From Macrostomum lignano (Eukaryota), in NCBI GenBank assembly GCA_002269645.1, contig NIVC01001839.1, positions 259,462 through 323,461 of the forward strand: DNA of 64,000 nucleotides, read 5' to 3'. Below, piece by piece: positions 29,920 through 59,465 of the stretch. Position 1 is the stretch's first letter. Every line of letters starts with the position of its first letter. The notes beneath the pieces were generated by a model. The model had not been told where the DNA came from. It saw only the letters and a program-made list of their open reading frames with translations, and ran no database searches. The translations under genes were made by a program, and so were the position numbers.

Positions 29920-30634
29920 CAAGGACTGCTCAAGTAGAAGGACAAGAAACTGTTTCTTAGAAAATGTTTATGAGGCTGGTTTTCTCTGAAAAATACACTA
30001 CGGAGATAGGAAGTTTTCATTTTTCAGCACAAAAATTGTTATTGCATTCGATAGGAGGCAGACCCAATGTTCATATTTTGATATGCTGTGTGTTTCTCAT
30101 TGCCTTTTTTATCCTCTACTGATATTCATTAAGCCTTTCGTTTAGAAAATTAGAATTCTATGTTAATTTTTTTATTCTACGTACATTTTCTGTGGCTTAA
30201 AATCATAAAAGTGCACATGGCACAGCTCGACTCTTTGGTTTTATGAATCTGTTTTATCAACTCTGTTACAAATATTGTTGCACAGCCAGCTAAAAATGAC
30301 AAATTAGATTAGTAAAACCCATGAGCCGTGCCTTGCCATTTTAAAGGTTTTTAGGCACAGAGTATGTTACAATAATTGTACGTAGAATAAAAAATTAACA
30401 AAGAATCCCAATTTTCTGAACGAAAAGCTTTATGAATATCAATAGAGCTATATAAAAGGCACAACATATTAAAAGATGAACACTGGGTCTGCTTCCTATC
30501 GAAAGTAATAACACTTTTTGTGCTGAAAAATGAAAATTTCCAATCTCCGTAGTGTATTTTTCTGCGAAAACCAGCCTCATAAACATTATCTAAGAAACGC
30601 TGTTTCCGTGCTTCTACTTCTTGAGCAGTCCTTG
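29920..30634. mobile_element. Foldback-type MITE with ~265-bp terminal inverted repeats and ~190-bp spacer
   Basis: Starts caaggactgctcaag and ends cttgagcagtccttg; 29920-30185 is the reverse complement of 30377-30634 (roughly 80-85% by eye). No TSD found. Second copy at 12600-13030. Confidence 0.85.
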
Positions 30635-31103
30635 GCTCAATGACCAGTGGAATGGGCAGGACTGCTTTGCATCCACTGGATAGCTTGCTTGCCATTCTCC
30701 AATTTTGTCACATTTAGTTGAAATCTGAAATCTACAGCCACAGTGACATTTAAACACACCCAGCAGTCTCCCTCCATCCTTCCTCTCTCACACCTCGCTG
30801 TTATAATCAGTAGTAATAGAAAATTACGTCCATACCCCATTTTTCAATTGCAAAACACGTAATAAGGTACCCGTCAGAAATTTTACAATAATATAAAAAA
30901 TCAAGTAGTAAGGTACTGAACCAAATGGTAGGGTATTCTACAGGAATTTCAACTACACTGCACGGTACCCACAAATAATTCAAAAGAAGAAAAGATCCCA
31001 AGTCCGATTAACCGACCAACTTGTCCAAAAACGCATTTTCAGTATATTTCTAAACGATGCGAATAAAAATAATTCCCCGACTCTTCGTCCACGCCCCCCC
31101 CCC

Positions 31104-31490
31104 TTAAATTTGAGGATCTCGGCGACGCACCCCCGGCGGAGCGCGCATGTATACCATCTTAAAACTATTCGCAGTCTCGTCCACCCGGAATCTGGCCACA
31201 CTCTCAATGGACACGGAGCCATCGGACTCCAAGTGACGGCAGTAGCCAGCACCGTCCAAAGAAGTGCAGCGGCGGTCGGATGGTAGTCTCCACGCCGTCG
31301 CTCGTACCCCCGTCCCGTGTCGTCCGAGTAGATTAATTCCCTCCGCCCGGCACACCGTCCTGATTTCATCAATCCGGGCGTTCGTCATCAGCCGCCGCGG
31401 CGTATAAGCAGTCGCCACGCACACGGCCCTGGCCACGGTGTCAAGCACCTGTGTCAGTGGAAGCCCGGCCTGCTGTCCTTCCAGGCGCAT
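31104..31490 (-). CDS. Hypothetical 128-aa protein inside the left TIR (outward-facing)
   Basis: Open GC-rich ORF with TATAAAAG on the same strand at ~31588-31595; near-identical copy in the right TIR. No family recognised. Confidence 0.35.
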   Translation of the reverse strand: MRLEGQQAGLPLTQVLDTVARAVCVATAYTPRRLMTNARIDEIRTVCRAEGINLLGRHGTGVRATAWRLPSDRRCTSLDGAGYCRHLESDGSVSIESVARFRVDETANSFKMVYMRAPPGVRRRDPQI

Positions 31491-32540
31491 GCGCTGGATC
31501 TGCGCGCGAAGTGTAGCAACCGAGGACGCTTGGGTTGCTTCCTGTTGTCCTTGGCTCGTTGGGATTTTGAGCGAATTTTTCTACTTTCTTTTATAGAGCA
31601 GGATTTGGTAGGGAGGGGCGCCATCTGGCTTTTTGTGCCACGTGGCAGTTTCGGGGTTGGGCTTGAATAACGAAGGAACAGCTGCCCCATGGACAAACCA
31701 TAGAATTCTAGATAACTAACTGGAAGAGAAGGCTCACTTTTTCGTGGGTCGAAAGCGGACACAACCGGGCCGAGTCATTTTAGCTTGTTTAAACGGCCTG
31801 CCTTTCCCTATCCAGGGAATACTCTACATAGAGTATGAGAGTATGTAGAGTATTCCCTGCCCTATCTCAGTCCCACTGACTAAGCGGGGTTTGAGGTGGG
31901 CAGGCTCTTCACAAGGCTTGGAAGTTTTTTTGTCCTAGACAGGAGAAAAACCCTTCGAAGGGGAAGGACACCTAACGGCCCGCCGCTAGCGGAGCCCATC
32001 CCACGCTAAAAATAGCCCGTTAACGGGACCCAGCCCATGGTGGGATGGGCTCCCTTAGCGGGGGCCAGCCCACGAGCGGAGAGGGAGAGGTGGGGTGGGT
32101 GTTGGGTGAGTGTGGAACGCCAGTGCGCACTAGCGTACTAGCACTGTACTAGCAATGAAGCTAGCTGAAAACACTGCACATCCGTGACTCATTTCTCGTA
32201 TATTAATGTATGCTGGATGAAGACGGCTCTTTGTCTTTCCCAACTCTCCCAAAATTAAAAAACTCCTAGAACGCATTTCGTTTTAAGCTGCAAGGAATTG
32301 TATTCTTTAAAGAAACGCGTTTCATTCAACGTATAGTTTCTACTTTTTAATACATATCATTTATCAAACTATTTGACTCAGTTGAATCTTTAAGATCTTG
32401 AGATTTATTCTTAATACGCTCGTAAGGCTTTCGTTATTTCTTTATTCCAAAGGTAAGCAAACGTTGGTTCTTAATTTGCATTGTACTCATTGTATTTTCT
32501 TTTATGTCTAGCTTATAATTGCAATATGCTAGGAATCTTA

Positions 32541-33718
32541 CGAGGGCTGCTTAATAAGTTCGCGGAAAAACATACTTATAGTTATCGCACAGTCGTGAAA
32601 TTTTACACACACTTAGCCCAACCTAATGGCACTTCTCAACATAGTCCCCAGCCAGATCAACGCATTTCTTCATCCGATGAAACCACGCCGCAAAGCAGTC
32701 CCTCAGTAGGCCGGATGCGGCAGCAGAGTCAGCTCAGTTGATGCCAAGAACTGCTGCGTGACACTGGCTCTGTGAGCGGGCGCGTTGTCGTGGTGCAGGA
32801 AAATGCCGCGATCTTTGGTCTTTGGCCGCTCTCGACGCAGGAATTCCAGCACCTGCGGCAGGCAGACACTGGAGTACCAGCTGCCAGTCACTGTGGCTCC
32901 CTCCTCGAGCAGAACGGGCGGCAGAATTCCGCACCGACGGAAAAACACCGCAGCCATCACTTTGCCGACGCTTCGCTCGCGACGAAATTTCAAGGGCGAA
33001 TCCTCCTCAAAGGCGACCCACTGCTTGCTCTGTACTTTTGTCTCGGGATCATAAAAGTACACCCACGTTTCATCACCTGTGAGGATGCCGTCCACCAAAT
33101 TTGAGGCGCCTGCGTCGAACTTGTCGAGCATGAAGTTCGCCAAATCCACGCGGGCCTGCATCTGAGCCGGCTTCAGTTGATGAGGGACCCAGCGAGCTGA
33201 CACCTTCCTCATGCCGAGGTGATCGTGCAAGATAGTAATGACGCTTGAATCCGAAATCCCGACATGTTTTTCGATTTCCCGAATCGTCACTCGGGCGGTC
33301 TGCATCGAGCAGCTTTCGGACACTGGCCACAGTTGTGTCCGAGATGGACGAATTTGGACGGCCTTCACGTTCATCATCGTCCAGCTCTAGACAGCCGATC
33401 GACCGAACCACTTGTACACCATCGTCTGGGATGGGGCTTCACTCTCAAGGGCTTTTTGAAGCGTCTGCAAGCATTCGGAGGCAGACAGGCCAAGCCGGAA
33501 TTGGACCAGAATTGCGACTCGCCTGTCGCGCTCAGTCAGGCGCAGCACTGGAGCGGGGGTTTCATCACTTCCTCGGCCACTGCGTCGCAACATTTTGGCC
33601 AAACTGGCTGAAAATTTGTGTGAAAGGTGCCAATATCTGAAGGAAAAAGTTCATAAAATTTCGTTTGATTCGCTTGAAGATAAGTTTGGTTTTCCGCGAA
33701 CTTATTAAGCAGCCCTCG
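32541..33718 (-). mobile_element. Mariner (DD34D-type) element, defective
   Basis: Perfect 29-bp TIRs cgagggctgcttaataagttcgcggaaaa; TA TSD at 32539-40 and 33719-20. Transposase with HTH, WVPHQL, TGDETW, HHDNAPAH and C-terminal KCVDLAGDYVEK; two frameshifts and deletion of the YSPDLAPSD motif after HPAY. Confidence 0.96.
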
Positions 33719-34595
33719 TATATTCTTCCAAAACCTTAAAGGTGGAAATATGGTCAAAGAAAAATAGTACAGGCGCAAGAAGTGAGGACGACTAGCCATC
33801 CATTTTCGTTTCAAACGAAAAAGATTTAAAAAAAACAAACTTAGCAAAGTAAGGTACTAAGCGAGATATTCTAAAATTGACAGACAGGCTAATTTCCTAA
33901 TTCGCAGAATCGCTGAGTCCCAGTTTTCTAATTTCTATAGATTGGACTTGTCCTTTAGCAGTTATCTTTATTTTCAGAATACTCGTATACTGCATCCGTT
34001 TGTAAATATTGTCAAAAAAGGCGGAAAAATAAATTTTGAATTTCCGCACAAAGTTAAAAAAATTAGGAATTTGAACAAAATTTAAATTCACGCGGATATT
34101 CAAAATCTCACGTTCGTTAAATTCTGGCAATCTGGCGCCTCCTTTGGCACTTCATTGGCCCTGAAATACTTGAACTGTAGTTGCTGTATGATCTTATTTC
34201 CTTTTCTAGTTTAGGAAGTCAAATAAAGAGTAAAGTAGTCAAATAAATGGATCTTATGCTGGAGTACAATGAGATACTGAATGTTAGCATTTTAAGCAAA
34301 GCGATAATATTGTTTGGAATTCTGTTTACACTAGAGCAAACTGATCTTTCGGACCCGCTCGTATTTAAGATAAAACTTTGAAAATAAAACAAAAATGGTA
34401 GAAAAGAAACAATTAAAAAGGGATAATAATTACCCAGTGTTGGGCACGATACTCAGAAAAAGTATCGGTTAAAAGCGATGCTCTGATACCCTTTCTGAAA
34501 AAATATCGACCTTCGATACATATCGGCTGTTTTGTGATTTTAATTTACAGTTGCTCAGGTTGCACTAAACGCAATCCGCCGCAATCAACCCGCAG

Positions 34596-34769
34596 GTGAC
34601 AGAATCCGCTGCCAGCAGACCTCATGGCTGGCTAGCCGTGGTTTGGCTACTCGGGACGCTGTTCACCTCCCCTGCTGAACGAGGCCATCGCTGATTTTGT
34701 CCGCTAAGATGGCGTTCCGCGACGATGGCCGGCCGGCGGCCACGTTCTGATGCTTGGCGGCGCCGCCTA
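34596..34769 (+). pseudogene. Decayed exon resembling the KDM3/JMJD1 pre-JmjC region
   Basis: Acceptor cgcag| and donor |gtgagt flank PLLNEAIADFVR*DGVPRRWPAGGHVLML, comparable by eye to KDM3 FLDHIIASVVE...HSWLCDGRLLCL; in-frame stops. Confidence 0.45.
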
Positions 34770-34888
34770 GTGAGTCATTGCATCCTACCACAACAGATAA
34801 GCACATTCCATCCATAATTGACTCGTCTAAAACAAATAGCCCCAGTCGGAATCCATAAATCCTTATCTGATTACAACTGTATCGTAAA

Positions 34889-34962
34889 TTCTGAATTGTA
34901 CTTCTGAATTGTACTTCTGAATTGTACTTCTGAATTGTACTTCTGAATTGTACTTCTGAATT
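34889..34962. repeat. 13-bp tandem repeat (ttctgaattgtac)n
   Basis: About 5.5 perfect units. Confidence 0.9.
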
Positions 34963-35379
34963 AACACCCCTCGTAAATTGAATTGCGAAGTATAAAAGTT
35001 CAGTAAAACAGAAATACTGAAGTATACTGAACTGACTAAAAATGACACTTTTAAAATATTTCGCAACAGCTGTAGCCAGGGGCGCGGATTTAGGGGTCTG
35101 GTGGGAGCGCCACTCCTCCCAGCGCTCCCTAGGAACTTTTATTACCTGGATACCTAGGTACTTCTTCCTAGGTACTAGAATTTACCTTGGCTAGTAATCG
35201 ACATACTGATTTACTTTGCTAAAATTCTACAGTTTTTGACGCAAGCAAGGCTGGGCCGTTAAATCATTGATGAAACAAGTTACAACCTTAGAAACTGTAA
35301 ATTAATATCACAAAACAGCCGACATGTATCGAAGCAACGAAACTAACCAGTCAAAAACACATTTTGCACTCTCATCCAG

Positions 35380-35572
35380 ATTCTGCCCGATCGCTACGAG
35401 GGCTTCTAGCGCGCTCTGCCGTTGCCGGAGTGCAGAGGGCGAGATTGCCGCCTGGCCACTCGGCTGCCGGCATTCTTTGTCCAGCCGGACCTGGAGCCCA
35501 GGATGTACAACGCCTATGGCCTGGCCGCTGCGATGTCATAGGGGCACCACAAACCTGCACTTGGATATCGCC
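35380..35572 (+). pseudogene. KDM3: KDM3/JMJD1 (JHDM2) histone demethylase JmjC exon, pseudogenised
   Basis: After acceptor tcatccag|: [62 protein letters not shown] versus KDM3 MLPTRFEDL..NLPLPEY.KRDG.LNLASRLP..FVRPDLGPKMYNAYG...GTTNLHLDVS. TAG at 35407-35409 and a frameshift before the HxD motif. Confidence 0.85.
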
Positions 35573-36519
35573 TGGATACTTTGGTCACCATAGCAACATT
35601 AATAGAAAATGAGAAGCAGATGAATGTTTATTTAAAACCAGTTTGATTACTTTTATCCCAGATTTAGACTATGAAACACCCGATGGCCGATATGATACGA
35701 ACTAAGTTTTGTTATTTTTCAGTTTCAACTGCTCCTGTCTTTTCGTGGTTCATATTTTCAGAATTTAACTAGCAATCAGCGCCCCCCTTGGGGAGCCAAA
35801 AATGCAGTACGAGTTTTTTTAATAAACTACATGTAGATTGTAGTGTCTCTTTGCAATAACCTCAGCAATCGCTTGTAAGCGTTGACATCTCAGCAATTCC
35901 TCCCCCCACAAGTCTTAACATATCAAACTCCCCCCTTGAAATCTGAGCGATGACCCCCATAAGCCTTGAAATCTTAAAAAATCTGTCAACCCTAACCCTA
36001 ACCCTAAAGCATTGCCATTTTAGTAATTCTCCCCAAGAGTCATTATAACATTACAGCATTATAGCAATTCCTCCAAGCCTTGACATCGTAGCGATTCCCA
36101 AATGAATCTCCTAACTTCGACATGACTCTTCTTTTATATCTACTTTCATCTGTTTAAAATGACGCTTCTTCTATTAGCGCCCCTCGTGGGGAACTAACAA
36201 AGAATGTAATAAAAAAGTGAATAAACTACATGTAGCTTCTGAATTTTACCTAGACATCTCAAAAATCCCTCATAAGCATTTACGAGTACATCTCAGTTAT
36301 TCCCCGTGAGCCTTAACATCTTAGTAATTCTCCTCAAGAGTCACAGCACAGTTTCACGTGACTCTTCTTTTATTTTGAAATGACGCTACTTTTTGACATG
36401 ACGCTTCTTTTTACATGATGCTTATTGATTTTTACGTAATGCTTCTATTTTTTTACATTTTTTTACTTTTTTCATTTTTACATAAAGCTCATTTTCTTTT
36501 CTACATCACGCCTCTGTTA

Positions 36520-36975
36520 TTTTTACCGGACGCTTTTATGATTTTTACATGACGCTTCTATGATTGTTTACATGACTCTTATATGATTGTTTACATGACG
36601 CTTCTATGATTTTTTACATGACGCTTCTATGATTGTTTACATGACGCTTCTATGATTGTTTACATGACGCTTATATGATTGTTTACATGACGCTTCTATG
36701 ATTGTTTACATGACGCTTCTATGATTTTTTACATGACGCTTCTATGATTGTTTACATGACGCTTCTATGATTGTTTACATGACGCTTCTATGATTGTTTA
36801 CAGGACGCTTCTATGATTTATTACATTATGCTTGTATGATTTTTACCGGACGCTTCTATGCTTTTTTACATGACGCTTCCATGATTGTTGACATGACGCT
36901 TCTATGATCGTTTACATGACGCTTCTATGATTGTTTGCATGACGCTTCTTTCATTTATACATGACGCTTCTTTTT
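36520..36975. repeat. 23-bp minisatellite (tttacatgacgcttctatgattg)n
   Basis: About 19 units. Confidence 0.95.
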
Positions 36976-37289
36976 TTGCTTTTATTAGCTGTGTTTTGAT
37001 ATTAGAATACACATACAGGCGCAGTCCCAAGGCTTTTTGCCGAATTTTGCGGACACGTTTGTGGACAAGTCTGGCTTGAGTTTATGTTTTGACAGCCACT
37101 TTGACTTGTCATTTTCTTCTACCAAAAACCGATTAAAGGCTTTCAAACCTTTCGATAAAAGGTGCCATAAATATTTATGCGAAGACTACATCTATATTTA
37201 ATTGTATAGCTAAAGAAACTAGAACGTCAGAAGCTTCCCCTCACCATTCCCCTCTGAGGGATATAAACAAGGGCATCTTATCAGGGATA

Positions 37290-39060
37290 AGTAATTAGAA
37301 ATCGTGGATTCGGATTCCAACATGAGGAATCAGGGATATGGAATTAGAAATCGTGGATTCGGATTCCAACATGAGGAATCAGGGATATGGAATTAGGAAT
37401 CGTGGATTCGGATTCCAACATGAGGAATCAGGGATATGGAATTAGGAATCGTGAATTCGGATTCCAACATGAGGAATCAGGGATAGGGAATTAGGAATCG
37501 TGGATTCGGATTCCAAAACGAGGAATCAGGGATATGGAATTAGGAATCGTGGATTCGGATTCCAAAACGAGGAATCAGGGATATGGAATTAGGAATCGTG
37601 GATTCGGGTTCCAAAATGAGGAATCAGGGATATGGAATTAGGAATCGTGGATTCGGATTCCAAAACGAGGAATCAGGGATATGGAATTAGGAATCGTGGA
37701 TTCGGGTTCCAAAATGAGGAATCAGGGATATGGAATTAGGAATCGTGGATTCGGGTTCCAAAATGAGGAATCAGGGATATGGAATTAGAAATTGTGGATT
37801 CGGGTTTCAAAATGAGGAATCAGGGATATGGAATTAGGAATCGTGGATTCGGATTCCAACATGAGGAATCAGGGATATGGAATTAGGAATCGTGGATTCG
37901 GATTCCAACATGAGGAATCAGGGATATGGAATTAGGAATCGTGAATTCGGATTCCAACATGAGGAATCAGGGATATGGAATTAGGAATCGTGGATTCGGA
38001 TTCCAACATGAGGAATCAGGGATATGGAATTAGGAATCGTGGATTCGGATTCCAAAACGAGGAATCAGGGATATGGAATTAGGAATCGTGGATTCGGGTT
38101 CCAAAACGAGGAATCAGGGATATGGAATTAGAAATTGTGGATTCGGGTTTCAAAATGAGGAATCAGGGATATGGAATTAGGAATCGTGGATTCGGATTCC
38201 AACATGAGGAATCAGGGATATGGAATTAGGAATCGTGGATTCGGGTTCCAAAACGAGGAATCAGGGATATGGAATTAGAAATTGTGGATTCGGGTTTCAA
38301 AATGAGGAATCAGGGATATGGAATTAGGAATTGTGGATTCGGATTCCAAAACGAGGAATCAGGGATATGGAATTAGGAATCGTGGATTCGGATTCCAACA
38401 TGAGGAATCAGGGATATGGAATTAGGAATCGTGGATTCGGGTTCCAACATGAGGAATCAGGGATATGGAATTAGGAATCGTGGATTCGGGTTCCAAAACG
38501 AGGAATCAGGGATATGGAATTAGGAATTGTGGATTCGGGTTCCAAAACGAGGAATCAGGGATATGGAATTCGGAATCGGGGATTGAGATTAAAAAATGAG
38601 CTTCTCACGGTTCTATGATAGCTGGCAGTCTTTCAAACATTTAGAAAAAGGTGCCATAAGCTCCTCTCTGCCTTATGAATTATGATATCTGACCCAGTCT
38701 TTCAAGTTTCTTGCAAAAGGTGCCATATGCCCTTCTGGAAAGGGAATTAAGAATCGTGGATTCGGATTCCAACATGAGGAATCAGGGATATGGATTTAGG
38801 AATTGTGGATTCGGATTCCAAAATAAGGAATCAGGGATATGGATTTAGGAATTGTGGATTCGGATTCCAAAATGAGGAATCAGGGATATGGAATTAGAAA
38901 TTGTGGATTCGGGTTCCAAAATGAGGAATCAGGGATATGGAATTAGAATTGTGGATTCGGATTCCAACATGAGGAATCAGGGATATGGATTTAGGAATCG
39001 TGGATTCGGGTTCCAAAACGAGGAATCGGGGATAGGGATTCGGAATCGGGGATTGAGATT
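37290..39060. repeat. 49-bp satellite (aatcagggatatggaattaggaatcgtggattcggattccaacatgagg)n in two arrays (37290-38590, 38745-39060)
   Basis: Period of 49 measured directly (38161 to 38210); the spacer block 38590-38745 is repeated and expanded at 39060-39410. Confidence 0.96.
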
Positions 39061-39914
39061 AAAAAATGAGCTTCTCACGGTTCTATGATAGCTGGCAGTC
39101 TTTCAAACATTTAGAAAAAGGTGCCATAACAAGCTCCTCTCTGCCTTATGAATTATGATAGATGATCCAGTCTTTCAAACATTTAGAAAAAGGTGCCATA
39201 ACAAGCTCCTCTCTGCCTTATGAATTATGATAGATGATCCAGTCTTTCAAACATTTAGAAAAAGGTGCCATAAGCTCCTCTCTGCCTTATGAATTATGAT
39301 ATCTGACCCAGTCTTTCAAGTTTCTCGCAAAAGGTGCCATATGCCTTTCTGGGAAAGGGAATTAAGAATCGGGGATTGAGATTAAAAATGAGCTTTTCTA
39401 GGTTCTATGATTTCTGGCAGTCTTTCAAACATTTAGACATTCAAACATCAAACATCAAATATTCTTTCAAACATTATATATACTACACCTTGTGGGATAT
39501 ACTGTAAAGGAGAGGATCGCGAGATAGGACAATAGGTAGAGATACAGACTACCTATAGGGTAGGACGAGAGTAGCATGACTGAATGACCTGGAGGAAGGT
39601 GATAAAAAGCGATAAAAGCGATATGGGCGATTCTGTGTGGCAACATAACTCATCACTAACAGTGCATCGAGTGGGTTAAAGATTAAGACAAAGGCATTAC
39701 ACAATTAAGTAGTAAAAGCAAATCATAAGTTAATTATAATAACTTCGTAAATCTCAGCAACATCGAAAAGTCGCCATCACAGAAGTCTGTGGTCGTCACT
39801 TTTGAAAGTGCAGGTGAAGTCTCTCAATCTTTGCGAGTGACGCAACGCCACGCGGCAGACTTGAGTTGAGGAATGAATTGGGGGAGCGGTGTGCGAGGGT
39901 TGAACGGATTAAAG

Positions 39915-40114
39915 CAGCGGTTCTCAACCTTTTTTTCAGGCGACCCCAATTTATTCACTTGCATCATTTTTAATGTTCGCGACCCCTTTTAAAATTAATA
40001 TACATGTAATGCATTATTATGTATGACAAACTCACACATTTCTTCGTGCTGCGACCCCAGAAAATGGTCACGCAACCCCACTGGGGGTCGCGACCCATAG
40101 ATTGAGAACCACTG
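39915..40114. mobile_element. 200-bp hAT (Charlie-like) MITE
   Basis: TIRs cagcggttctcaac / attgagaaccactg; perfect 8-bp TSD gattaaag at 39907-39914 and 40115-40122. Confidence 0.92.
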
Positions 40115-40414
40115 GATTAAAGCTACCTTGATTAGTTTATATCATATCTTTTATTTATAATATTTTAACTCACTCACTAATAATATATTACTCTCTGGCG
40201 CATAGAGTGGCGACTTTTCAATGTTGCTGAGTAACGATATTTAGTAGATCCTGAACTCTCAGCAAATAGTGATCTAGATGGAGTATACCTTATTGAAAAA
40301 TAATCAATAACAAAACAATAAACAATAACAAGTCCGAAAATGACACTTTTGATTTTTATAGTGCCAAATAGATATAAATCTGCGCCGATCCCTGAAGTCA
40401 TGCCTTAAAGCCCA

Positions 40415-41815
40415 AAAACGCTCGGAAAGCTCAAATCGGCGCTGGAAAGCTCAAATCGGCGCGGGAAAGCTCAAATTGGCGCCGGAAGTCAAATTTGGCG
40501 CCAGGATTACCAAATCGGCGCCAGGGATCGCCGAATCAGCGCCGGAATGCTGAAATCCGCTCGAGAAAACCTAAACCAGCGCTAGAGAGCTGAAACCAGC
40601 GCTAGAAAGCTCAAATCGGCGCGGGATAGCTCAAATTGGCGCCGGAAGTCAAATTTGGCGCCAGGATCACCAAATCAGCGCCGGTCGGCGCCAGGATCAC
40701 CGAATCAGCGCCGGAATGCTAAAATCAGCGCCAAAAAGCCCAGACCAGCGCTAGAAAGCTCAAATCGGCGCAGGATAGCTCAAATTGGCGCGGGAAGTCA
40801 AATTTGGCGCCAGGATCACCAAATCGGCACCAGGATCGCTGAATAAGAGCCGGAATGCTGAAAACAGCGCCAAAAAGCCCGGACCAGCGTTGGAAAGCTC
40901 AAATCGGCGCAAGATAGCTAAAATTGGCGCGTGAAAGCTCAAATTGGCACCGGAAGTCAAATTTGGCGTCAGGATCACCAAATCGGCGCCAGTATCGCCA
41001 AATCAGCGCTAAAAAGCCCGGACCAGCGCTGGAAAGCTCAAATAGGCGCGGGAAAGCTCAAATTGGCGCCGGAAGTCAAATTTGGCGCCAGGATCACCAA
41101 ATCGGCGCCAGGATCGCTGAATCAGCGCCGGAATGCTGAAATCAGCTCAAGAAAACCTAAACCAGCGCTAGAAAGCTCAAATTAGCGCTAGAAAGCTCAA
41201 ATCGGCGCAGGATAGCTCAAATTGGCGCGGGAAAGCTCAATTTGGCGCCGAAAGTCAAATTTGGCGCCAGGATCACTAAATCGGCGCGAGGATCGCCAAA
41301 TCAGCGTTGGAATGCTGAAATCAGCGCCATAAAGCCCGGACCAGCGCTGGAAAGCTTAACTTGGCGCGGTAAAGCTCAAATTGGGGCCGAAAGTCAAATT
41401 TGGCGCCAGGATCGCCGAATCGGCGCCAGGATCATCAAATCGGCGCCAGGATCGCTGAATCAGCGCCGGAATGCTGAAATCAGCTCAAGAAAACCTAAAC
41501 CAGCGCTAGAAAGCTCAAATCGGCGCAGGATAGCGCAAATCGGCGCGGGAAAGCTCAAATTGGCGCTGGAAGTCAAATTTGGCGCCAGGATCACCAAATC
41601 GGCGCCAGGATCGCCGAATTAGCGCCGGAATGCTGAAATCAGCTTGAGAAGACCTTAACTAGCGCTGGAAAGCTCAAATTGGCGCTAGAAAGCTCAAATC
41701 GGCGCAGGATAGCTCAAATTGGCGCGGGAAAGCTCAATTTGGCGCCTAAAGTCAAATTTGGCGCCAGGATCACCAAATCGGCGCCAGGATCCCCAAATCA
41801 GCGCTGGAATGTGCC
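40415..41815. repeat. Complex GGCGCC-rich satellite built from ~19-20-bp subunits in a longer higher-order unit
   Basis: Recurring gaaagctcaaat[c/t]ggcgc, ggaagtcaaatttggcgccaggatc and gaatcagcgccggaatgctgaaatc blocks. Confidence 0.9.
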
Positions 41816-42388
41816 AACGAGCGTAGAAGTGGCAGCATATATCAGCTTGCTACTTCTGGGCGCCAAGTTTAATATACCGGCGCCAATTTCAGCCTTTGGG
41901 CGCCAATTTTAGCGCCCTGGCAAGGTCAATGCATTTAGTTCTCACTCAATGGAGCCGAAAAAAAAGTTTTTTTTCTATTTTGAATTAGTGCCATGTATCT
42001 TGACAACCAATGCGAGTCAAGTTCTGGCGTCTGCTTCTCCACAGCCCCGCAATGGCATATCCTAACCATTGTGGGCTGGCCCGCGCTAAGGGAGCCCACC
42101 CCACCGTGGGGCGGACCCCGCTAACGGGCTATTTTTAGCGTGGGATGGGCTCCGCTAACGGGCGGCCATAAACTGGGAAGGAAGATCCCCGGTAAATCAG
42201 TGCTGTTTCTTTGTCTGTGATGCACACGGGGTAACAGGCCCCCCACTTGAAAGCTGAACGCATGCACATTGGGTGTACATTTGCTCGCATGCTTTTGAGG
42301 ATGCCTTCTCCACTTCACCCTAAATGAAAAATTTATAAAGATTCGATATGATGCATGCTATATCAGAGACTATAGTCAGAGAAAAAGA

Positions 42389-42700
42389 ATGGTTTATAAA
42401 TACGCAGCTTACAACTACAGGTCTGGATCTGGATATGCAACTACAAATAAAAATCCAGCGGTTCAATCTTCAGGAGCAGAAAGCAGAATATTTTCTCATG
42501 TGCTTCCTTTGCATGATTTTCAACTATTTGAAGAATGGTCGCAACGAATTCGAAGGGTAAACTACCAACCCAGGACAGAATCTCAACTGTGCTCGTTGCA
42601 CTTTATTGCCACCGATTTTCACACAACGTCACAAGATTCTTAGTGAGCGCAGGAGAAACAGCGACACTCTGAATAAGGAATGATGGTGTGCCGGTGTGCC
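42389..42700 (+). pseudogene. THAP zinc-finger domain pseudogene (probably transposon-derived)
   Basis: MVYKYAAYNYRSG...SHVLPLHD..LFEEW..RIRR..YQP...SQLCSLHFIATDF, then frameshifted DS/ERRR and DGVP. Matches the THAP pattern MxxxCxAxxCxxG...FP...W...LCSxHF...AVP. Confidence 0.7.
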
Positions 42701-42709
42701 TCCATACAA

Positions 42710-43480
42710 CAACAAAATGCGCTGTCAGCCATTCCAGCGAGTCATGGTCATGAGAGACAAGGACAACGTCACACGTTTCAGGGCCTGGGCGCGAACCGCC
42801 GGCCGCACCGCCGGCAGAGTCCGGGGCGCCGGCATTAGCCGGCAAGAAGTCGACGAAACACAGACTGCGTGCCTGTCCCCGCCGGTAGGGTGCCTGCAGC
42901 GACAGCAGCAGCACTTCCTGCACCGGCTGTGGACTTTAGGACTCGGCTCGGATGATGTGGCCAGCTGGAGTCGTGGACGGCGCAAAAGTTTGCTGGGAAG
43001 GAACAGGCCAGTGCGGCGATATAGCCCGCATTGGTGACGTGCTCGCAGCCGATCTTAAAGACAGGCCAGCGTGCGCCGCATTGACCTGCTGTTCGAGCGA
43101 ATCCGTCAGTGTCCAGGTCTCGGTGTTGTACAACAGGACGGTCTCGATCACCGCCTTGAACAACGCCGCCCTCTGGCGGTCAGGCAGGGCCTCGGACTGC
43201 AGGACAGCCCTCACGAAACGGAAGGCAACCCAAGCAAGTCCACGGCGACGTGCTAGGTCCTCTGGAACATCAAGCACCATGGTCTGCAGACCGCCGAGGC
43301 AGACGAACTGCTGACAGTGCGGAAGCTTCGACACCTGCCTGTCAGCGTCTCGGTATTCGAAGCACGACGGTCTTCTGCGTGTTGACCCCCAGGCCGACGC
43401 TCGCAGCAACGCTCACAAGCTGGTCCAGCTGGCGCTGGGCGCGTTCGACGGTCGGCAGGAAGAGACTCGACGAAATCGTC
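42710..43480 (-). mobile_element. 3' fragment of a non-LTR retrotransposon (RTE-like RT C-terminal part)
   Basis: Frameshifted VERAQRQLDQLVSVAASVGLGVNTQKT (late RT motifs), RRRGLAWVAF, ALFKAVIETVLLYNTETWTLT, HVTNAGLY, RLQLA/GHIIR; short (ttg)n at the 3' end near 42710. Confidence 0.8.
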
Positions 43481-44114
43481 GAGTTTGACCGCGATGCATC
43501 AGGTGAAATCGATCGCCGGAAAGTACCGCGATGCAGTGGCGATGGTACCGCGATGCATCTTCTTCATAGATTAGATTAAGCAGCTAATTTATGTTCATAC
43601 TATGATTTTTTACTGATCCTATGTGTTTACTTTGCGGCTTTGCAAAAATATTAGTTTTGTTAAGATATGTCACAAATACCTTTAGAGACTCTTAATAAGC
43701 ACTGACTTGTTAATTAAAAAAATAAACTTAAAGAATTAAACATTACTCTTAATAACAGCAGCCAATTATTAGTGAAAACATTAGTGTTGAATAAGGCAGC
43801 CAGAAAACATGCAGGCTCCCACTCGGCCCGGTTGTGTCCGCCCCCCAAAAAAGCCTTCGCTTCCAGTTAGTTATCTAGAATTCTATGGTCGACAAACAAA
43901 TCCGTTCGGCAGGCTGGTTAAATAAGTTGGGCAGTTTGGAGAAAATAATGGTGCTTTCCGGCCCACGCACGCGAGCTCTGCTCTATTGTAATACTGTCTC
44001 GCTAAGTTGAGAGTCCACAGGCCGCCCACGTGGGGTCAGGTGCTCTATTGTATTACTATCTCGCTCAGTGAAAGTCCAGCCGGTCGCCCAACTGGCTGGA
44101 AAGGGCCTTCAGCC

Positions 44115-44505
44115 GGGCCAGCCGGTCGTTGCTGCAGGCTTCGGTTTCTTGGGCGCATGAGGGTGGGGAGGGGCGCGGAGGGCCAGCCGGTCGTTGCTGC
44201 AGGCTTCGGTTTCTTGGGCGCATGAGGGTGGGGAGGGGCGCGGGGGGCCAGCTGGTCGTTGCTGCAGGCTTCGGTTTCTTGAGCGCATGAGGGTGGGGAG
44301 GGGCGCGGGGGGCCAGCTGGTCGTTGCTGCAGGCTTCGGTTTCTTGAGCGCATGAGGGTGGGGAGGGGCGCGGGGGGCCAGCTGGTCGTTGCTGCAGGCT
44401 TCGGTTTCTTGGGCGCATGAGGGTGGGGAGGGGCGCGGAGGGCCAGCTGGTCGTTGCTGCAGGCTTCGGTTTCTTGGGCGCATGAGGGCGGGGAGGGGCG
44501 CAGCT
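44115..44505. repeat. 65-bp GC-rich tandem repeat
   Basis: catgagggtggggaggggcgc...ggtcgttgctgcaggcttcggtttcttg[g/a]gcg; period 65 (44221 to 44286), about 6 units. Confidence 0.93.
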
Positions 44506-44820
44506 GGACTTTCCCCCTTCATCCTCGAGCCGCGCCCCCGCCCCGGGTCCACATTGAGTCCACACTGACATATAATCGAGCGGATGGTCGGCTCAGAGTC
44601 AGAGTTGCCCACAGATAGTGAGATTAGACCTACATTTTTACGGTGAGATTGGACCTACATCTTTGCAATGGCCGAATCAAACGAGCGTCATGAGCCGACC
44701 CCGAGTGGAGCTGCACCCTGCTCCTCCCGCCGGGCAATTTTCACCACGTTGGCGCGGTAAGTACGGTATGAGTGGTGCCAGAACCCCTCGGTTGCTGCAC
44801 TTCGCGCGCAGATCCAGCGC

Positions 44821-45201
44821 ATGCGCCTGGAAGGACAGCAGGCCGGGCTTCCACTGACGCAGGTGCTTGACACCGTGGCCAGGGCCGTGTGCGTGGCGAC
44901 TGCTTATACGCCGCGGCGGCTGATGACGAACGCCCGGATTGATGAAATCAGGACGGTGTGCCGGGCGGAGGGAATTAATCTACTCGGACGACACGGGACG
45001 GGGGTACGAGCGACGGCGTGGAGACTACCATCCGACCGCCGCTGCCCTTCTTTGGACGGTGCTGGCTACTGCCGTCACTTGGAGTCCGATGGCTCCGTGT
45101 CCATTGAGAGTGTGGCCAGATTCCGGGTGGACGAGACTGCGAATAGTTTTAAGATGGTATACATGCGCGCTCCGCCGCGGGTGCGTCGCCGAGATCCTTA
45201 A
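44821..45201 (+). CDS. Hypothetical 126-aa protein inside the right TIR (copy of 31104-31490)
   Basis: Differs from the left copy by T>P, G>R, an earlier stop and at least one synonymous change. Confidence 0.3.
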   Translation: MRLEGQQAGLPLTQVLDTVARAVCVATAYTPRRLMTNARIDEIRTVCRAEGINLLGRHGTGVRATAWRLPSDRRCPSLDGAGYCRHLESDGSVSIESVARFRVDETANSFKMVYMRAPPRVRRRDP

Positions 45202-46376
45202 ATTTAGGGAGGGGGGGGGCGTGGACGAAGAGTCGGGGAATTATTTTGATTCGCATCGTTTAGAAATATACTGAAAATGCGTTTTTGGACAAGTTGGTCG
45301 GTTAATCGGACTTGGGATCTTTTCTTCTTTTGAATTATTTGTGGTACCGTGCAGTGTAGTTGAAATTCCTGTAGAATACTCTACCATTTGGTTCGGTTCC
45401 TTACTACTTGATTTTTAATAGAAAAATATAGTATGTGCGTAATAAAATTTCTGACGGGTACCTTATTACGTGTTTTGCAATTGAAAAATGGGGTATGGAC
45501 GTAATTTTCTATTAGTGCTATAATCCTGTAGAACGAATTAACGCGATTATCAACGTACAATAAGATGGTCATTCATCCGGGAAGCTCGAGTGCACAATGC
45601 ATTGCAGCAGCTGTCTGCAATTTGTTCGCATTGGGAATGCGCAGACTTGCTGCACAGGGTTCAAGTCTATCTGTCTCCCTCGCTGGCTCTATCTATGCAT
45701 CTGTTGCTATGGCAAAGCGCGGGTTGGCAGGCAGCTGGATTCTGGCCCGGCAAAGTAGAGCGATGACGGAGTTTCGCTGTGACCTCCTATACCGCTGTTT
45801 GTGGCCAGATGTGGCAGCAATACCGACTGCTGCGACCCTAAACCCTTACCTTCGACATCGAGCGTAGGGCGAGGGTATATACATGTAGGTCAGAGTTTCA
45901 CACGTGTTTGTGTCTTATAGCAAAAGTGTAGCAATAAGAACAGTTTTGTTGGACAAAGTGTCAAAATATTGTGGCCATAAATTTTCCTCTGCAATGTGCG
46001 GCGTTTAAGATAGAAAACTTTTTTTTACCTGAAATGCATTTTTGAAACTTTAGTTCGGAAAATTTGGAGGGAGAGAGCACTTTACTCAGTGGCTGACCCA
46101 GGGGGTCAATCGGGGACAGCTAATCCCCACTCACTCCCGGTAAAACACAAGATTCATTGGAGAATCCATTGGAGAATAAGTGCAACATGTGCAATTGCGC
46201 AGATGATGCTATGAGATTTCTATTTAAAAAGCAAAACAACTTGAAGATACGGCTCGTATGTGAAGCTCACAACTATCAGATACAGTCTAATTTTAGAACA
46301 ACTTGTCACAAGAGGTCATTCAAAGCGCAGTCATTAAATGACACAATGACGCATTCAGGACTCATAAAGTAGAAAT

Positions 46377-47194
<818 letters not shown>

Positions 47195-47810
47195 TCTATT
47201 CTATCTACCCGGTACCTAACTACCTAGCTTGGCATGTGGGAAGCATTTTTGCGAATGGTGCACTAAAAGCAGGAACCGCTGGAATTCAGCCCACAATTGG
47301 CTGGGTCACTTCAATAGACTGTGTTCCGGTAGTTCAGCAGCAGCAGAGATGGAAGCAAAGCAGACATAGCGAGAGACAGTGGCCGAAAATGGGGGAGTAA
47401 ATAGAGGAGGATGGATCTACTAAGAAGAATGAAAATGCTTTTTCGGCGATGGAAAACTTTTCTATAAATTGGAAAGCAAAGTATAGTAGATTGCTGATGC
47501 AGAGTGGCTTGCATTGGGAAGCTGGGGCTGATGGGTGGCGCAGACAGGGGCGACGGAGGGGTAGAGGGGTCAGAGGGGAGAGGGTAGAGCGCCATATTCG
47601 CTTCGGAACCCCCCCCCCGCTAAGCCAACCTTCATCGTTTCCCCTCGGCCTCACTCCATTCGCGGCAACACGTCCTCTTTACTTTCCTTTGCGGTTCGAT
47701 GCAGTTCGCAGTTCGCAGCGGATAAATAAGACCAACGCACTAAGCGAAAGTGGCGCGCCAACAAAGTTGAGAATTATTGTCAAACTAGCGACCTAACTGA
47801 ACTGGCATTT

Positions 47811-47933: not shown

Positions 47934-48004
47934 GTAAGCGAATCTTTTCTGGTTAGGGATTGGTTTGAATTTAGCGCTGATAATGCGATTTGTTATTGCT
48001 TTAG

Positions 48005-48865
48005 TGGCGCCAGACCTATTGCTTTGGTGGCGCCAGACCTATTGCTTTGGTGGCGCCAGACCTATTGCTTTGGTGGCGCCAGGCCTATTGCTTTGGTGGC
48101 GCCAGACTCATTGTCTTGGAGTGGGGGAAACGCCAGACTCATTATCTTGGAGTGGGAGAGGCGCCAGACTCATTGTCTTGGAGTGGGGAAGCGCCAGACT
48201 CATTATCTTGGAGTGGGAGAGGCGCCAGACTCATTATCTTGGAGTGGGAGAGGCGCCAGACTCATTGTCTTGGAGTGGGAGAGGCGCCAGACTCATTGTC
48301 TTGGAGTGGGAGAGGCGCCAGACTCATTGTCTTGGAGTGGGAGAGGCGCCAGACTCATTGTCTTGGAGTGGGAGAGGCGCCAGACTCATTGTCTTGGAGT
48401 GGGAGAGGCGCCAGACTCATTATCTTGGAGTGGGAGAGGCGCCAGACTCATTATCTTGGAGTGGGAGAGGCGCCAGACTCATTGTCTTGGAGTGGGAGAG
48501 GCGCCAGACTCATTGTCTTGGAGTGGGAGAGGCGCCAGACTCATTGTCTTGGAGTGGGAGAGGCGCCAGACTCATTGTCTTGGAGTGGGAGAGGCGCCAG
48601 ACTCATTGTCTTGGAGTGGGAGAGGCGCCAGACTCATTATCTTGGAGTGGGAGAGGCGCCAGACTCATTATCTTGGAGTGGGAGAGGCGCCAGACTCATT
48701 GTCTTGGAGTGGGAGAGGCGCCAGACTCATTGTCTTGGAGTGGGAGAGGCGCCAGACTCATTGTCTTGGAGTGGGAGAGGCGCCAGACTCATTGTCTTGG
48801 AGTGGGAGAGGCGCCAGACTCATTGTCTTGGAGTGGGAGAGGCGCCAGACTCATTGTCTTGGAGA
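48005..48865. repeat. 23-bp units (gcgccagacctattgctttggtg) switching to a 31-bp array (gcgccagactcattgtcttggagtgggagag)n
   Basis: About 4 plus about 25 units, inside PDZ intron 1. Confidence 0.96.
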
Positions 48866-49299
48866 GGGTGCACCGAACTGAAATTTTATGCTTAACATTC
48901 AGAGGACGGTTAAATCAACCAGAGCGCAAAAAACAACTTAGTAAGAATGTAGCAAGGAGAAAGTACAACGTTAAAAAAAAGTTATTCAGTGCACGGTTAT
49001 GCAACGCTAAGTGTTAGACAAAAAACAGGCACGCAATATAAAAAACATGTTTCTCAGGCTATTGATATTTTATAAATTAACTGATTGTTCAAAAGCTCTT
49101 GCAACCATTCAGTTTTATATCGGTGCGATACAATCCAGATTCTCTTGGATGTTATTGAAATTTTGCAGGACTTTTGAAGAAGTTTCGAAGGCAAACATAA
49201 TTGGCAATGCAAGTGCGCTTGTTGCCTGTTACTGCCGCCCAAAATCATGGTTATTGTAGCGATAAGAATAATTTATAAATAATCAATTTATTTTATTAG

Positions 49300-50960: not shown

Positions 50961-51369
50961 TGCGTAACCAGTTGAAATAATCCTATATTCTCCTTTTAAT
51001 ATTCTGTTTGTCTGTCTCTCTGACTTTCTATTCCCCTTTCCCTTCAAAAGGGCATAAACTATATATGAAATACTTAAACTTATAGTCAAAACAAATTTGA
51101 TTGCACGGCAATAAAATCAAATTAGCTAAGTATTGGAGATATTTCGATCTGGATAGTTTACACGCAAAGCACCATACATTAAAGAATTGTAAGCCAAATA
51201 GTGTAGTATTTCGGGGTGGTGGATCGGTCATAATAAAACAAGATTGCAAGTGTGTTGTAAAAAACATTTTATTTTTTGCACGAATCGAACTTCAAGCGAT
51301 CTAGGAAGATTCGGGAAATTGACTTGCACAGCTGACGACCGAAAACTTTATAGAGCACACTCTGAAACC

Positions 51370-52410
51370 ATCTTAGAGACTGTGACAACTTTTTCGGGAC
51401 TCTGACATCCTCTTAGAGACCCTGACAACCTTTCGTAGACTCTGATATCCTTTTACAGACCCTGGCACTTTTTGGAGACTCTGAAATCCTCTTAGAGACC
51501 CTGAAACCCTTTTGGAGACTCTGACATCCTCTTAGAGACACTGACACCCTTTTTTGTAGACTCTGACATCCTCTTAGAGACCCTGGCACCCTTTTTGGAG
51601 ACTCTGACATCCTCTTAGGGACACTGACACCCTTTTGTAGACTCTGACATCCTCTTAGAGACTCTGAAACCCTTTTGGAGACTCTGACATCCTCTTAGAG
51701 AACCTGGCACCCTTTTTGGAGACTCTGACATCCTCTTAGAGAACCTGGCACCCTTTTTTGAGACTCTGACATCCTCTTAGAGACTCTGAAACCCTTTTGG
51801 AGATTCTGACATCCTCTTAGAGACTCTGAAACCCTTTTGTAGACTCTGACATCCTCTTAGAGACTCTGAAACCCTTTTGGAGATTCTGACATCCTCTTAG
51901 AGACTCTGAAACCCTTTTGTAGACTCTGACATCCTCTTAGAGACTCTGAAACCCTTTTGGAGACTCTGACATCCTCTTAGAGAACCTGGCACCCTTTTTG
52001 GAGACTCTGACATCCTCTTAGAGACACTGACACCCTTTTGTAGACTCTGACATCCTCTTAGAGACTCTGAAACCCTTTTGGAGACTCTGACATCCTCTTA
52101 GAGAACCTGGCACCCTTTTTGGAGACTCTGACATCCTCTTAGAGAACCTGGCACCCTTTTTTGAGACTCTGACATCCTCTTAGAGACTCTGAAACCCTTT
52201 TGTAGACTCTGACATCCTCTTAGAGACTCTGAAACCCTTTTGGAGACTCTGACATCCTCTTAGAGACTCTGAAACCCTTTTGGAGACTCTGACATCCTCT
52301 TAGAGAACCTGGCACCCTTTTTGGAGACTCTGACATCCTCTTAGAGACTCTGAAACCCTTTTGGAGATTCTGACATCTTCTTAGGGATACTGACACCGTC
52401 TTAATGATCC
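51370..52410. repeat. Dimeric ~40-bp satellite (gagactctgacatcctctta + gagactctgaaacccttttg)
   Basis: Two ~20-bp subunits sharing gagactctga; about 25 dimers. Confidence 0.95.

Positions 52411-59126: not shown

Positions 59127-59465
<339 letters not shown>

What the first reader, a model, noticed from the sequence alone, without database searches (positions are those of the whole stretch)
30809..45519. 14.7-kb cargo-filled element with Polinton/Maverick ends but no Polinton genes
Seen: ~715-730-bp inverted repeats (about 95% identical by eye) ending in AGTAGT on the left and AGCACT (reverse strand) on the right, flanked by an exact 6-bp duplication ATAATC; total length 14,711 bp. Known: 6-bp TSDs, long TIRs starting AG/AGT and a 15-20 kb size define Polintons/Mavericks, which normally encode pPolB, RVE integrase, a packaging ATPase, a protease and capsids. 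None is recognisable here. The interior holds KDM3 exons, a THAP relic, mariner, LINE, a hAT MITE and several satellites. Inference: a non-autonomous Polinton-ended vehicle that moved a block of old host-like DNA, a Pack-MULE-like behaviour I do not know to be described for this group.
Basis: partly seen in the sequence, partly recalled or inferred. Interest (0 to 1): 0.85.

Follow-up and report, generated by a model that had tools for sequence, protein, structure and literature searches.

The report
Gene-less Maverick/Polinton shell in a flatworm
A 14.7-kb stretch of the flatworm Macrostomum lignano genome has the ends and insertion footprint of a Maverick/Polinton virus-like transposon, but its interior holds only repeats and dead transposons, so it is a non-autonomous member of a known class and not a demonstrated carrier of host genes.

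Summary
Inverted repeats lie at 30809-31525 and 44786-45519 (717 and 734 bp). They are 97.5% identical without gaps and 95.9% with gaps. An exact ATAATC duplication flanks the 14,711-bp unit. The left tip is AGTAGT, the commonest published terminal motif of vertebrate Mavericks, 5'-(AGT)2//(ACT)2-3'. The right tip matches it at 4 of 6 bases. The duplication, repeat length, tip motif and total size all fit Maverick/Polinton. No Polinton gene is detectable: Pfam scans of all interior reading frames of 28 aa or more outside the satellites found only a broken mariner transposase and a sub-threshold THAP match. About 4.7 kb of the interior is satellite DNA. One satellite array is far more diverged (73-78% between units) than the two arms are from each other, so the junk was probably already inside at integration. 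The window is M. lignano contig NIVC01001839.1. Best reading: a non-autonomous Maverick/Polinton-type element integrated as one unit by an integrase supplied in trans. Gene-less "N" Polintons of 11-15 kb are already catalogued in zebrafish, and Polintons are known in the flatworm Schmidtea. Pack-MULE-like capture of host DNA is not supported. I could not test for other copies, an autonomous partner or an empty site.

The parts
30803..30808 (.). Left copy of the target-site duplication, ATAATC
   Evidence: Read directly from the sequence. It is identical to 45520-45525. The chance of a 6/6 match is about 2.6e-4.
30809..31525 (+). Left terminal inverted repeat, 717 bp. The tip is AGTAGT = (AGT)2. 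The outer ~285 bp are AT-rich, followed by a poly-C tract and an inner GC-rich 432 bp.
   Evidence: The tip motif matches the Maverick end motif in PMC8097293.
31104..31490 (-). 128-aa ORF inside the left arm, reading outward. Its mirror copy in the right arm is 44821-45201 (+). It is probably not a gene.
   Evidence: No homologue was found in 5.8 billion proteins, in 1.84 billion representatives (2 spurious hits to repeat proteins) or in IMG/VR. The codon-usage score is -0.16 per codon, against about +0.2 for host genes. AlphaFold2 mean pLDDT is 53.
31697..31775 (+). Module A, which has an inverted partner A' at 43821-43889 (83.5% identical)
31977..32073 (+). Module B, a 97-bp unit that is itself palindromic, with an inverted partner B' at 42071-42167 (88.7% identical)
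32539..33720 (-). Nested mariner-like element with 41-nt inverted repeats. Its transposase gene is broken at least twice: one in-frame stop, and loss of the C-terminal end of the catalytic domain.
   Evidence: Inverted pair I9. Pfam Transposase_1 E 1.5e-9 and HTH_48 E 1.9e-6. Flanks shown.
34511..35334 (.). 824-bp MITE-like unit with 52-nt inverted repeats (92%). Superfamily undetermined; no clear 8-bp duplication.
   Evidence: Pair I8. Flanks.
36352..36971 (.). Satellite with a 23-bp unit
37280..39437 (.). Satellite with a 49-bp unit (27 copies, 94% matching), followed by related 49/97-bp and 72-bp arrays
40424..41811 (.). Old satellite with a 20-bp unit in higher-order repeats of about 159 bp. 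Units are only 73-78% alike.
42071..42167 (-). Module B', the inverted partner of B
42389..42643 (+). ORF with a weak THAP zinc-finger match
   Evidence: Pfam THAP E 1.1e-4, 23.4 bits against a 23.9-bit cut-off. PDB THAP1/THAP2 E 0.002-0.016.
42606..43583 (-). GC-rich LINE-like fragment covering the C-terminal part of a reverse transcriptase and the region after it. Its frame is broken at least once by a frameshift.
   Evidence: ORFs. The resemblance to LINE reverse-transcriptase C-terminal motifs is my own reading. There was no Pfam or PDB hit.
43821..43889 (-). Module A', the inverted partner of A
44115..44501 (.). Young GC-rich tandem repeat, 65 bp x 6 copies, 98% matching
44786..45519 (-). 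Right terminal inverted repeat, 734 bp. The tip reads AGCACT on the reverse strand, 4 of 6 matches to (AGT)2.
45520..45525 (.). Right copy of the target-site duplication, ATAATC

Best explanation
This is a non-autonomous, gene-less element of the Maverick/Polinton type in Macrostomum lignano. The whole 14.7-kb unit integrated once between a GNAT acetyltransferase gene and a rolling-stone-like gene. Shown: paired ~720-bp terminal inverted repeats, an (AGT)2 tip, an exact 6-bp duplication spanning the whole unit, and no element-encoded genes. Inferred: a retrovirus-type (rve) integrase from an autonomous Maverick elsewhere in the genome recognised the two tips and made 6-bp staggered cuts in the target, which produced the duplication. 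Also inferred: any copying of the element before integration used a protein-primed polymerase supplied in trans, because a short reiterated tip such as (AGT)2 is what protein-primed replication of the adenovirus type uses to jump back. The interior is junk, not functional cargo: about 4.7 kb of satellites, a dead mariner, a MITE-like unit, a LINE-like scrap and a weak THAP relic. Most of that junk was probably already inside when the element last integrated.
For: Structure and footprint. The chance of the 6-bp duplication is about 2.6e-4, and AGTAGT occurs about 2.3e-4 per position. Published Maverick hallmarks are 6-bp duplications, inverted repeats of 46-1,447 bp, sizes of 12.7-24.6 kb and the end motif 5'-(AGT)2//(ACT)2-3' (PMC8097293). 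Another source gives 13-25 kb, 100-1,500-bp repeats and 5-8-bp duplications (PMC10748475). No core genes: Pfam scans of all stop-to-stop frames of 45 aa or more, and of frames of 28-44 aa outside the arms, mariner and satellites, found no DNA_pol_B_2, rve, adenain, A32-type ATPase or capsid family. It is not two independent insertions: neither arm has its own flanking duplication, and the duplication pairs only across the whole unit. It is young relative to its contents: the arms are 97.5% identical, on the order of two duplicated M. lignano loci at 97.4-98%. The 20/159-bp satellite units are only 73-78% alike. At 2-4% divergence any Maverick gene still present would be easy to recognise. Precedent: gene-less Polinton-1N1_DR and Polinton-2N1_DR, and Polintons in the flatworm Schmidtea (PMC4028283 Table S1). 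Host identity.
Against: No sequence link to any autonomous Maverick was shown. By definition Polintons encode pPolB and an integrase (PMC5499653), and this element has neither. The right tip is AGCACT, with two mismatches in the six bases that matter most. Only one copy was seen: none in the other 49 kb of the window or in 70 kb of other M. lignano DNA, and the genome itself could not be searched. No paper reports Mavericks in Macrostomum. Gene conversion between the arms could make the element look younger than it is. A perfect duplication is still about 22% likely at 22% divergence.
Confidence: 0.62

Rival explanations
1. This is an autonomous Maverick that was gutted where it sits. A complete element integrated here, later lost all its genes by internal deletion, and was refilled by nested insertions and satellite growth. 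Gene conversion between the arms kept them similar.
For: Most vertebrate Maverick loci (96%) are degraded fossils (PMC8097293). Nested transposons and satellites are present. The inner GC-rich part of the arms is more alike than the outer part (98.6% against 95.8%), as GC-biased conversion would give.
Against: Not a single gene scrap remains. That would require deleting about 12 kb and replacing it with about 13 kb of unrelated DNA, while keeping both arms, both tips and a perfect duplication. The 20/159-bp satellite is much older than the arm divergence, so it would have had to arrive already old.
Confidence: 0.12
2. Maverick ends came to flank a block of host DNA and moved it to this site.
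For: The interior has no relation to Maverick genes. It contains old DNA that pre-dates the integration. Nematode Mavericks carry host-derived cargo next to a terminal repeat (10.1101/2022.07.12.499685).
Against: No host gene fragment was found: no JmjC/KDM3 or other host domain in Pfam or PDB searches. The interior does not match the surrounding 49 kb or 70 kb of other loci, so no source locus is known. Junk of this kind accumulates in any long-lived non-autonomous lineage without a capture event. Modules A and B recur in mirror order on both sides, which hints that at least the outer 1.3-3.4 kb belong to the element lineage and not to captured DNA.
Confidence: 0.12
3. This is a long-repeat DNA transposon of another superfamily. 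One candidate is a P/Galileo-like element, which has 7-8-bp duplications, repeats of up to about 1 kb and a THAP-bearing transposase. An unclassified family is also possible.
For: A 7-bp reading of the duplication (TATAATC) is possible. There is a weak THAP relic inside. GGTAC-type motifs recur in the first 170 bp of the arms, as transposase-binding sites do in cut-and-paste elements.
Against: The 7-bp reading makes the tips asymmetric. No Tnp_P_element or any other DDE domain apart from the nested mariner was found. The exact (AGT)2 tip with a 6-bp duplication is the published Maverick signature. The features of P/Galileo given here are from my own knowledge and were not checked.
Confidence: 0.1
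4. The arrangement arose by chance or by misassembly. Either two unrelated repeat copies happen to be inverted, or the PacBio assembly created the arrangement.
For: The genome is highly repetitive and is described as a hard-to-assemble neopolyploid (PMC10733133 abstract). Only one assembly was available.
Against: The exact 6-bp duplication at the exact outer ends, together with the (AGT)2 tip, has a joint chance of about 1e-7. The arms differ by 18 substitutions and 3 indels, so they are not a collapsed or mirrored read. The arms have no individual duplications.
Confidence: 0.03

Closest known systems
Non-autonomous "N" Polintons in Repbase, such as Polinton-1N1_DR (15,469 bp) and Polinton-2N1_DR (11,092 bp) of zebrafish
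   Same: These carry Polinton-family names and terminal features. They are close to full length but lack the major capsid protein, penton, ATPase and protease (PMC4028283 Table S1). This element is 14.7 kb with no core gene.
   Different: They come from a different host phylum. They are assigned to their family by sequence relation to autonomous Polintons, which could not be shown here. The table does not say whether they retain pPolB or integrase.
Intact vertebrate Mavericks (Barreat & Katzourakis 2021, PMC8097293)
   Same: They have a 6-bp target-site duplication, terminal repeats of 46-1,447 bp, a size of 12.7-24.6 kb and the end motif 5'-(AGT)2//(ACT)2-3'. The left tip here is identical to that motif.
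   Different: They encode eight conserved intronless genes and this element encodes none. The right tip here is degenerate (AGCACT).
Flatworm Polintons (Polinton-1_SM and Polinton-2_SM of Schmidtea mediterranea)
   Same: They show that the class exists in Platyhelminthes, at 12.8-15.9 kb.
   Different: They have capsid, ATPase and protease genes. No sequence comparison was possible with these tools without writing out consensus sequences.
Cargo-carrying nematode Mavericks (wasp and krma cargo; 10.1101/2022.07.12.499685)
   Same: Foreign DNA is carried between a terminal repeat and the core genes.
   Different: There the cargo is 2-5 kb of real genes inside an otherwise complete Maverick. Here nothing but non-genic DNA is present.
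Pack-MULEs (Mutator-like elements that carry host gene fragments)
   Same: They are non-autonomous elements with long terminal repeats and an interior unrelated to the transposase.
   Different: Pack-MULEs have 9-10-bp duplications and recognisable host exon fragments with identifiable source genes (my own knowledge). Neither was found here.

Membership tests
Maverick/Polinton | 6-bp (range 5-8 bp) target-site duplication | tested here: met
   ATAATC lies directly outside both ends. The published ranges are in PMC8097293 and PMC10748475.
Maverick/Polinton | Long terminal inverted repeats (46-1,447 bp, or 100-1,500 bp) | tested here: met
   The arms are 717 and 734 bp and are 97.5% identical without gaps.
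Maverick/Polinton | Conserved 6-bp end motif, most commonly 5'-(AGT)2//(ACT)2-3' | tested here: met
   The left tip AGTAGT is an exact match. The right tip reads AGCACT on the reverse strand, a 4 of 6 match, and both tips start with AG.
Maverick/Polinton | Size of about 13-25 kb | tested here: met
   The element is 14,711 bp.
Maverick/Polinton | Encodes a protein-primed family B polymerase and an rve integrase. [quoted passage not shown] | tested here: not met
   There was no DNA_pol_B_2 or rve hit in any interior frame of 28 aa or more. The element can therefore only be a non-autonomous derivative, not an autonomous member.
Maverick/Polinton | Virion module: major and minor capsid proteins, packaging ATPase and adenain-like protease | tested here: not met
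   There were no Pfam hits. Capsid proteins are poorly covered by Pfam, so their absence is less certain than that of the ATPase and protease.
Non-autonomous Polinton family | Terminal repeats homologous to those of an autonomous Maverick in the same genome | not testable with these tools
   No tool holds the M. lignano genome as searchable DNA. 27-mers from the repeat are absent from IMG/VR and JGI metagenomes.
Mobile family in general | Several copies at different sites, each with its own duplication, or an empty site in a homeologue or another strain | not testable with these tools
   There is one copy in the window and none in 70 kb of other loci. No homeologue of the neighbouring genes is on record.
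Pack-MULE-like gene capture | The interior contains host gene fragments with an identifiable source locus | tested here: not met
   No host domain was found, and KDM3/JmjC is absent, in Pfam and PDB searches. The source-locus part of the test could not be run.
Two independent insertions of a 0.7-kb repeat | Each copy is flanked by its own target-site duplication | tested here: not met
   The inner borders at 31525/31526 and 44785/44786 show no repeat of the outer flanks.
P/Galileo-like elements | 7-8-bp duplication and a THAP-bearing P-type transposase | tested here: not met
   A 7-bp reading is possible only with asymmetric tips. There was no Tnp_P_element hit, and THAP is sub-threshold.

The most novel reading that the evidence does not exclude
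The element may be a natural gutless Maverick: a gene-less shell that keeps genome length (14.7 kb, inside the 12.7-24.6 kb range of intact elements, like the 11-15-kb zebrafish N families). It would keep that length because it is copied and perhaps packaged in trans by an autonomous relative. Arbitrary DNA between two Maverick ends, whether junk or host sequence, could then be moved within a genome and possibly between genomes. On this reading the satellites would act as length filler.
Probability: 0.12. Interest if true: 0.65.

Novelty: new member of a known kind. Interest (0 to 1): 0.33.

Why it matters
If the assignment holds, this is the first described Maverick/Polinton-type element in Macrostomum lignano, a regeneration and transgenesis model. 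I found no paper linking the two. It would also show that the (AGT)2 terminal motif known from vertebrates occurs in a flatworm element. It implies that an autonomous Maverick with a working integrase was in this genome about as recently as its duplicated loci diverged. The wider question is whether gene-less Mavericks keep genome length because of a packaging constraint and can ferry arbitrary DNA. That question is interesting, but this single copy does not answer it.

Tried and rejected
- **ORF in the repeat as a gene relic.** I found no homologue in 5.8 billion proteins, 1.84 billion representatives (the two hits are bacterial repeat proteins) or IMG/VR. Codon usage is not host-like. The AlphaFold2 model was too poor to search with (pLDDT 53).
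- **Empty site or homeologue.** The GNAT neighbour has no second copy on record. A combined query of lipase, rolling-stone-like and mariner sequences returned only 62-66%-identical lipase paralogues elsewhere. It was swamped by lipases, so it also failed as a way to sample mariner loci.
- **Other copies of the repeat.** There are none in the window, in 70 kb of other M. lignano loci, in IMG/VR or in JGI metagenomes.
- **Longer ancient repeat.** Modules A and B are mirrored on both sides, but the spacers between them are not homologous. A once-continuous 1.3-kb repeat is therefore not shown.
- **RNA genes.** There are no Rfam or tRNA hits in 29.5-46.5 kb.
- **KDM3 exons.** They were not found by Pfam or PDB searches.
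- **Comparator sequences.** The Mavirus accession is not in the phage collection. Kapitonov & Jurka 2006 is not held.
- **Whole-frame translation.** The tool refuses translations that contain stops, so I joined stop-to-stop segments with X spacers instead.

Full report
**1. What is there**

The window comes from Macrostomum lignano. The GNAT-like ORF next to the feature is encoded on contig NIVC01001839.1 of assembly GCA_002269645.1. Papers tie that accession to M. lignano. The closest relatives of the neighbouring lipase are proteins named Macrostomum lignano.

- The two arms are 30809-31525 and 44786-45519.
- In the alignment they share 698 matches, 18 substitutions and three indels. That is 97.5% identity without gaps and 95.9% with gaps.
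- The outer AT-rich 285 bp are 95.8% identical and the inner GC-rich 432 bp are 98.6% identical.
- Homology ends abruptly at the same base in both arms.
- ATAATC lies directly outside both tips, and the unit is 14,711 bp.
- A 6/6 flank match has a chance of about 2.6e-4.
- The repeat occurs nowhere else in the 64 kb. It is the only long inverted pair that is not microsatellite.

**2. One unit, not two insertions**

If the arms were two independent insertions of a 0.7-kb repeat, each would carry its own duplication. The inner borders show none, and the duplication pairs only across the whole 14.7 kb. The arms differ by substitutions and indels, so the arrangement is not a mirrored read.

**3. 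The ends are Maverick/Polinton ends**

Barreat and Katzourakis (PMC8097293) describe the hallmarks of vertebrate Mavericks:
- perfect 6-bp duplications;
- terminal repeats of 46-1,447 bp;
- sizes of 12.7-24.6 kb;
- a conserved 6-bp end motif, most commonly 5'-(AGT)2//(ACT)2-3'.

The left tip here is AGTAGT. The right tip, read on the reverse strand, is AGCACT, which matches at four of six bases. AGTAGT occurs only 29 times in 128 kb of both strands. An (AGT)2 tip together with an exact 6-bp duplication at the ends of a 720-bp inverted pair is therefore far beyond chance.

PMC10748475 gives similar ranges: 13-25 kb, repeats of 100-1,500 bp and duplications of 5-8 bp. From general knowledge of protein-primed replication, as in adenovirus, a short reiterated tip is what allows the primed polymerase to jump back. 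That fits the class but was not tested here.

**4. No Maverick genes**

I scanned every stop-to-stop frame of 45 aa or more in the element against Pfam. I also scanned frames of 28-44 aa outside the arms, the mariner and the satellites. The only hits were:
- mariner domains (Transposase_1 and HTH_48);
- a THAP match just under the curated cut-off.

There was no DNA_pol_B_2, rve, adenain, A32-type ATPase or capsid family. At 2-4% divergence any Maverick gene still present would be obvious, so the genes are truly absent and have not merely decayed.

**5. What the interior is**

From left to right:
- about 1 kb of unassigned sequence holding two short modules, A and B;
- a 1.18-kb mariner-like element whose transposase is broken at least twice;
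- an 824-bp MITE-like unit;
- three satellite blocks, at 36352-36971, 37280-39437 and 40424-41811;
- module B';
- a weak THAP ORF;
- a GC-rich LINE-like scrap, with its frame broken at least once;
- module A';
- a young 65-bp x 6 tandem repeat;
- the right arm.

Satellites make up about 4.7 kb. PDB searches of the interior frames found only weak THAP1/2 matches. The LINE call rests on my reading of reverse-transcriptase C-terminal motifs, and the hAT label of the MITE is unverified. There are no RNA genes.

**6. Age and order of events**

Two duplicated M. lignano loci on different contigs (L003 and L004) are 97.4-98% identical. The arm-to-arm divergence is of the same order. The units of the 20/159-bp satellite are only 73-78% alike at every offset. 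That array is therefore several times older than the arm divergence.

The simplest reading is that this junk was already inside the element when it last integrated. That favours movement of a gene-less element over decay of a complete one in place.

There is a caveat. Gene conversion between the arms could hide a greater age, and a perfect 6-bp duplication is still about 22% likely at 22% divergence.

Modules A and B recur in mirror order on both sides, at 83.5% and 88.7% identity, and are absent from the flanks. The spacers between them are unrelated. They hint at an older, larger symmetry of the element lineage but do not prove it.

**7. The ORF in the repeat**

Each arm carries a 126-128-aa ORF reading outward. 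It has no homologue in the three searches I ran. Its codon usage is not host-like and its predicted structure is poor. I treat it as a by-product of the GC-rich sequence.

**8. Mechanism**

Shown:
- one integration event of the whole unit with a 6-bp staggered target cut;
- Maverick-type tips;
- no self-encoded enzymes.

Inferred:
- integration by an rve integrase from an autonomous Maverick acting in trans on the two tips;
- copying by a protein-primed polymerase in trans.

Not shown:
- that such an autonomous element exists in M. lignano;
- that other copies of this family exist.

**9. Comparison with what is known**

- Gene-less N Polintons of nearly full length are already in Repbase. Polinton-1N1_DR (15,469 bp) and Polinton-2N1_DR (11,092 bp) both lack the major capsid protein, penton, ATPase and protease (PMC4028283 Table S1).
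- Polintons exist in the flatworm Schmidtea (same table).
- Nematode Mavericks carry 2-5 kb of host-derived cargo genes.

A non-autonomous Maverick-type shell is therefore a new member of a known kind. It meets the structural membership tests and fails the gene-content test that defines autonomous Polintons (PMC5499653). I file it as Maverick-type and non-autonomous, with assignment provisional until a shared repeat with an autonomous element is shown. No paper links Macrostomum with Mavericks or Polintons.

**10. Limits**

No tool held the flatworm genome as searchable DNA. Copy number, an autonomous partner, an empty site and a source of the interior all remain open.

I did not use the published FASTA of Polinton capsid proteins as queries, because these derive from consensus sequences (see referred steps).

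**11. Verdict**

The claim of Maverick/Polinton ends without genes is supported. The Pack-MULE-like cargo vehicle is unsupported, and its claimed novelty is overstated. Interest is modest at 0.33. The most novel reading still open is a length-conserved, trans-propagated shell able to ferry arbitrary DNA, at a probability of about 0.12.

Noticed in passing
window 29952-30598: There is a 647-bp foldback or MITE-like unit with arms of 161 and 59 nt (86-88% complementary), 210 bp to the left of the element. No clear target-site duplication is visible.
   Followed up: partly
window 31697-31775 / 43821-43889 and 31977-32073 / 42071-42167: Two short modules, A and B, recur in mirror order inside both sides of the element, at 83.5% and 88.7% identity. 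The spacers between them are unrelated. B is itself palindromic. They could be relics of an older, longer symmetry or small independent repeats.
   Followed up: partly
window 30904-30911 (+) and 45401-45408 (-): The tip octamer AGTAGTAA recurs inside each arm about 95 bp from the end. Motifs containing GGTAC recur in the first 170 bp of the arms.
   Followed up: no
window 40424-41811 versus the arms: The units of the 20/159-bp satellite are only 73-78% alike, while the arms are 97.5% alike. The array looks several times older than the integration.
   Followed up: partly
L003 and L004 (contigs NIVC01000105.1 and NIVC01000283.1): Two lipase loci with the same gene order are 97.4-98% identical over about 10 kb. 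They are duplicated (homeologous or haplotypic) regions kept apart in the assembly. No such twin is on record for the locus studied here.
   Followed up: partly
whole window, e.g. 9164-9833, 17660-18333, 19126-19661, 47994-48868, 51359-52397, 55046-55731, 56792-57790: The density of minisatellites is very high (46 Tandem Repeats Finder rows). Long (TATC)n/(TAGA)n tracts at 46376-47207 and 59124-59459 form spurious long inverted pairs.
   Followed up: no
window 4279-6348 (-): A P2X receptor is encoded as a single 689-aa ORF with a long Q/P/A-rich C-terminal tail (Pfam P2X_receptor E 4e-98). Other neighbours are an SH2 protein, otopetrin, a pancreatic-type lipase, a GNAT acetyltransferase and a rolling-stone-like protein.
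   Followed up: partly
P0012: A pancreatic-lipase-like protein, 46% identical to the flatworm lipase, is labelled Escherichia coli on a 1.5-kb contig. This is probably eukaryotic contamination in a bacterial assembly.
   Followed up: no
window 31816-31858: There is a near-perfect 43-bp palindrome (GGGAATACTCTACAT ... ATGTAGAGTATTCCC) between modules A and B.
   Followed up: no
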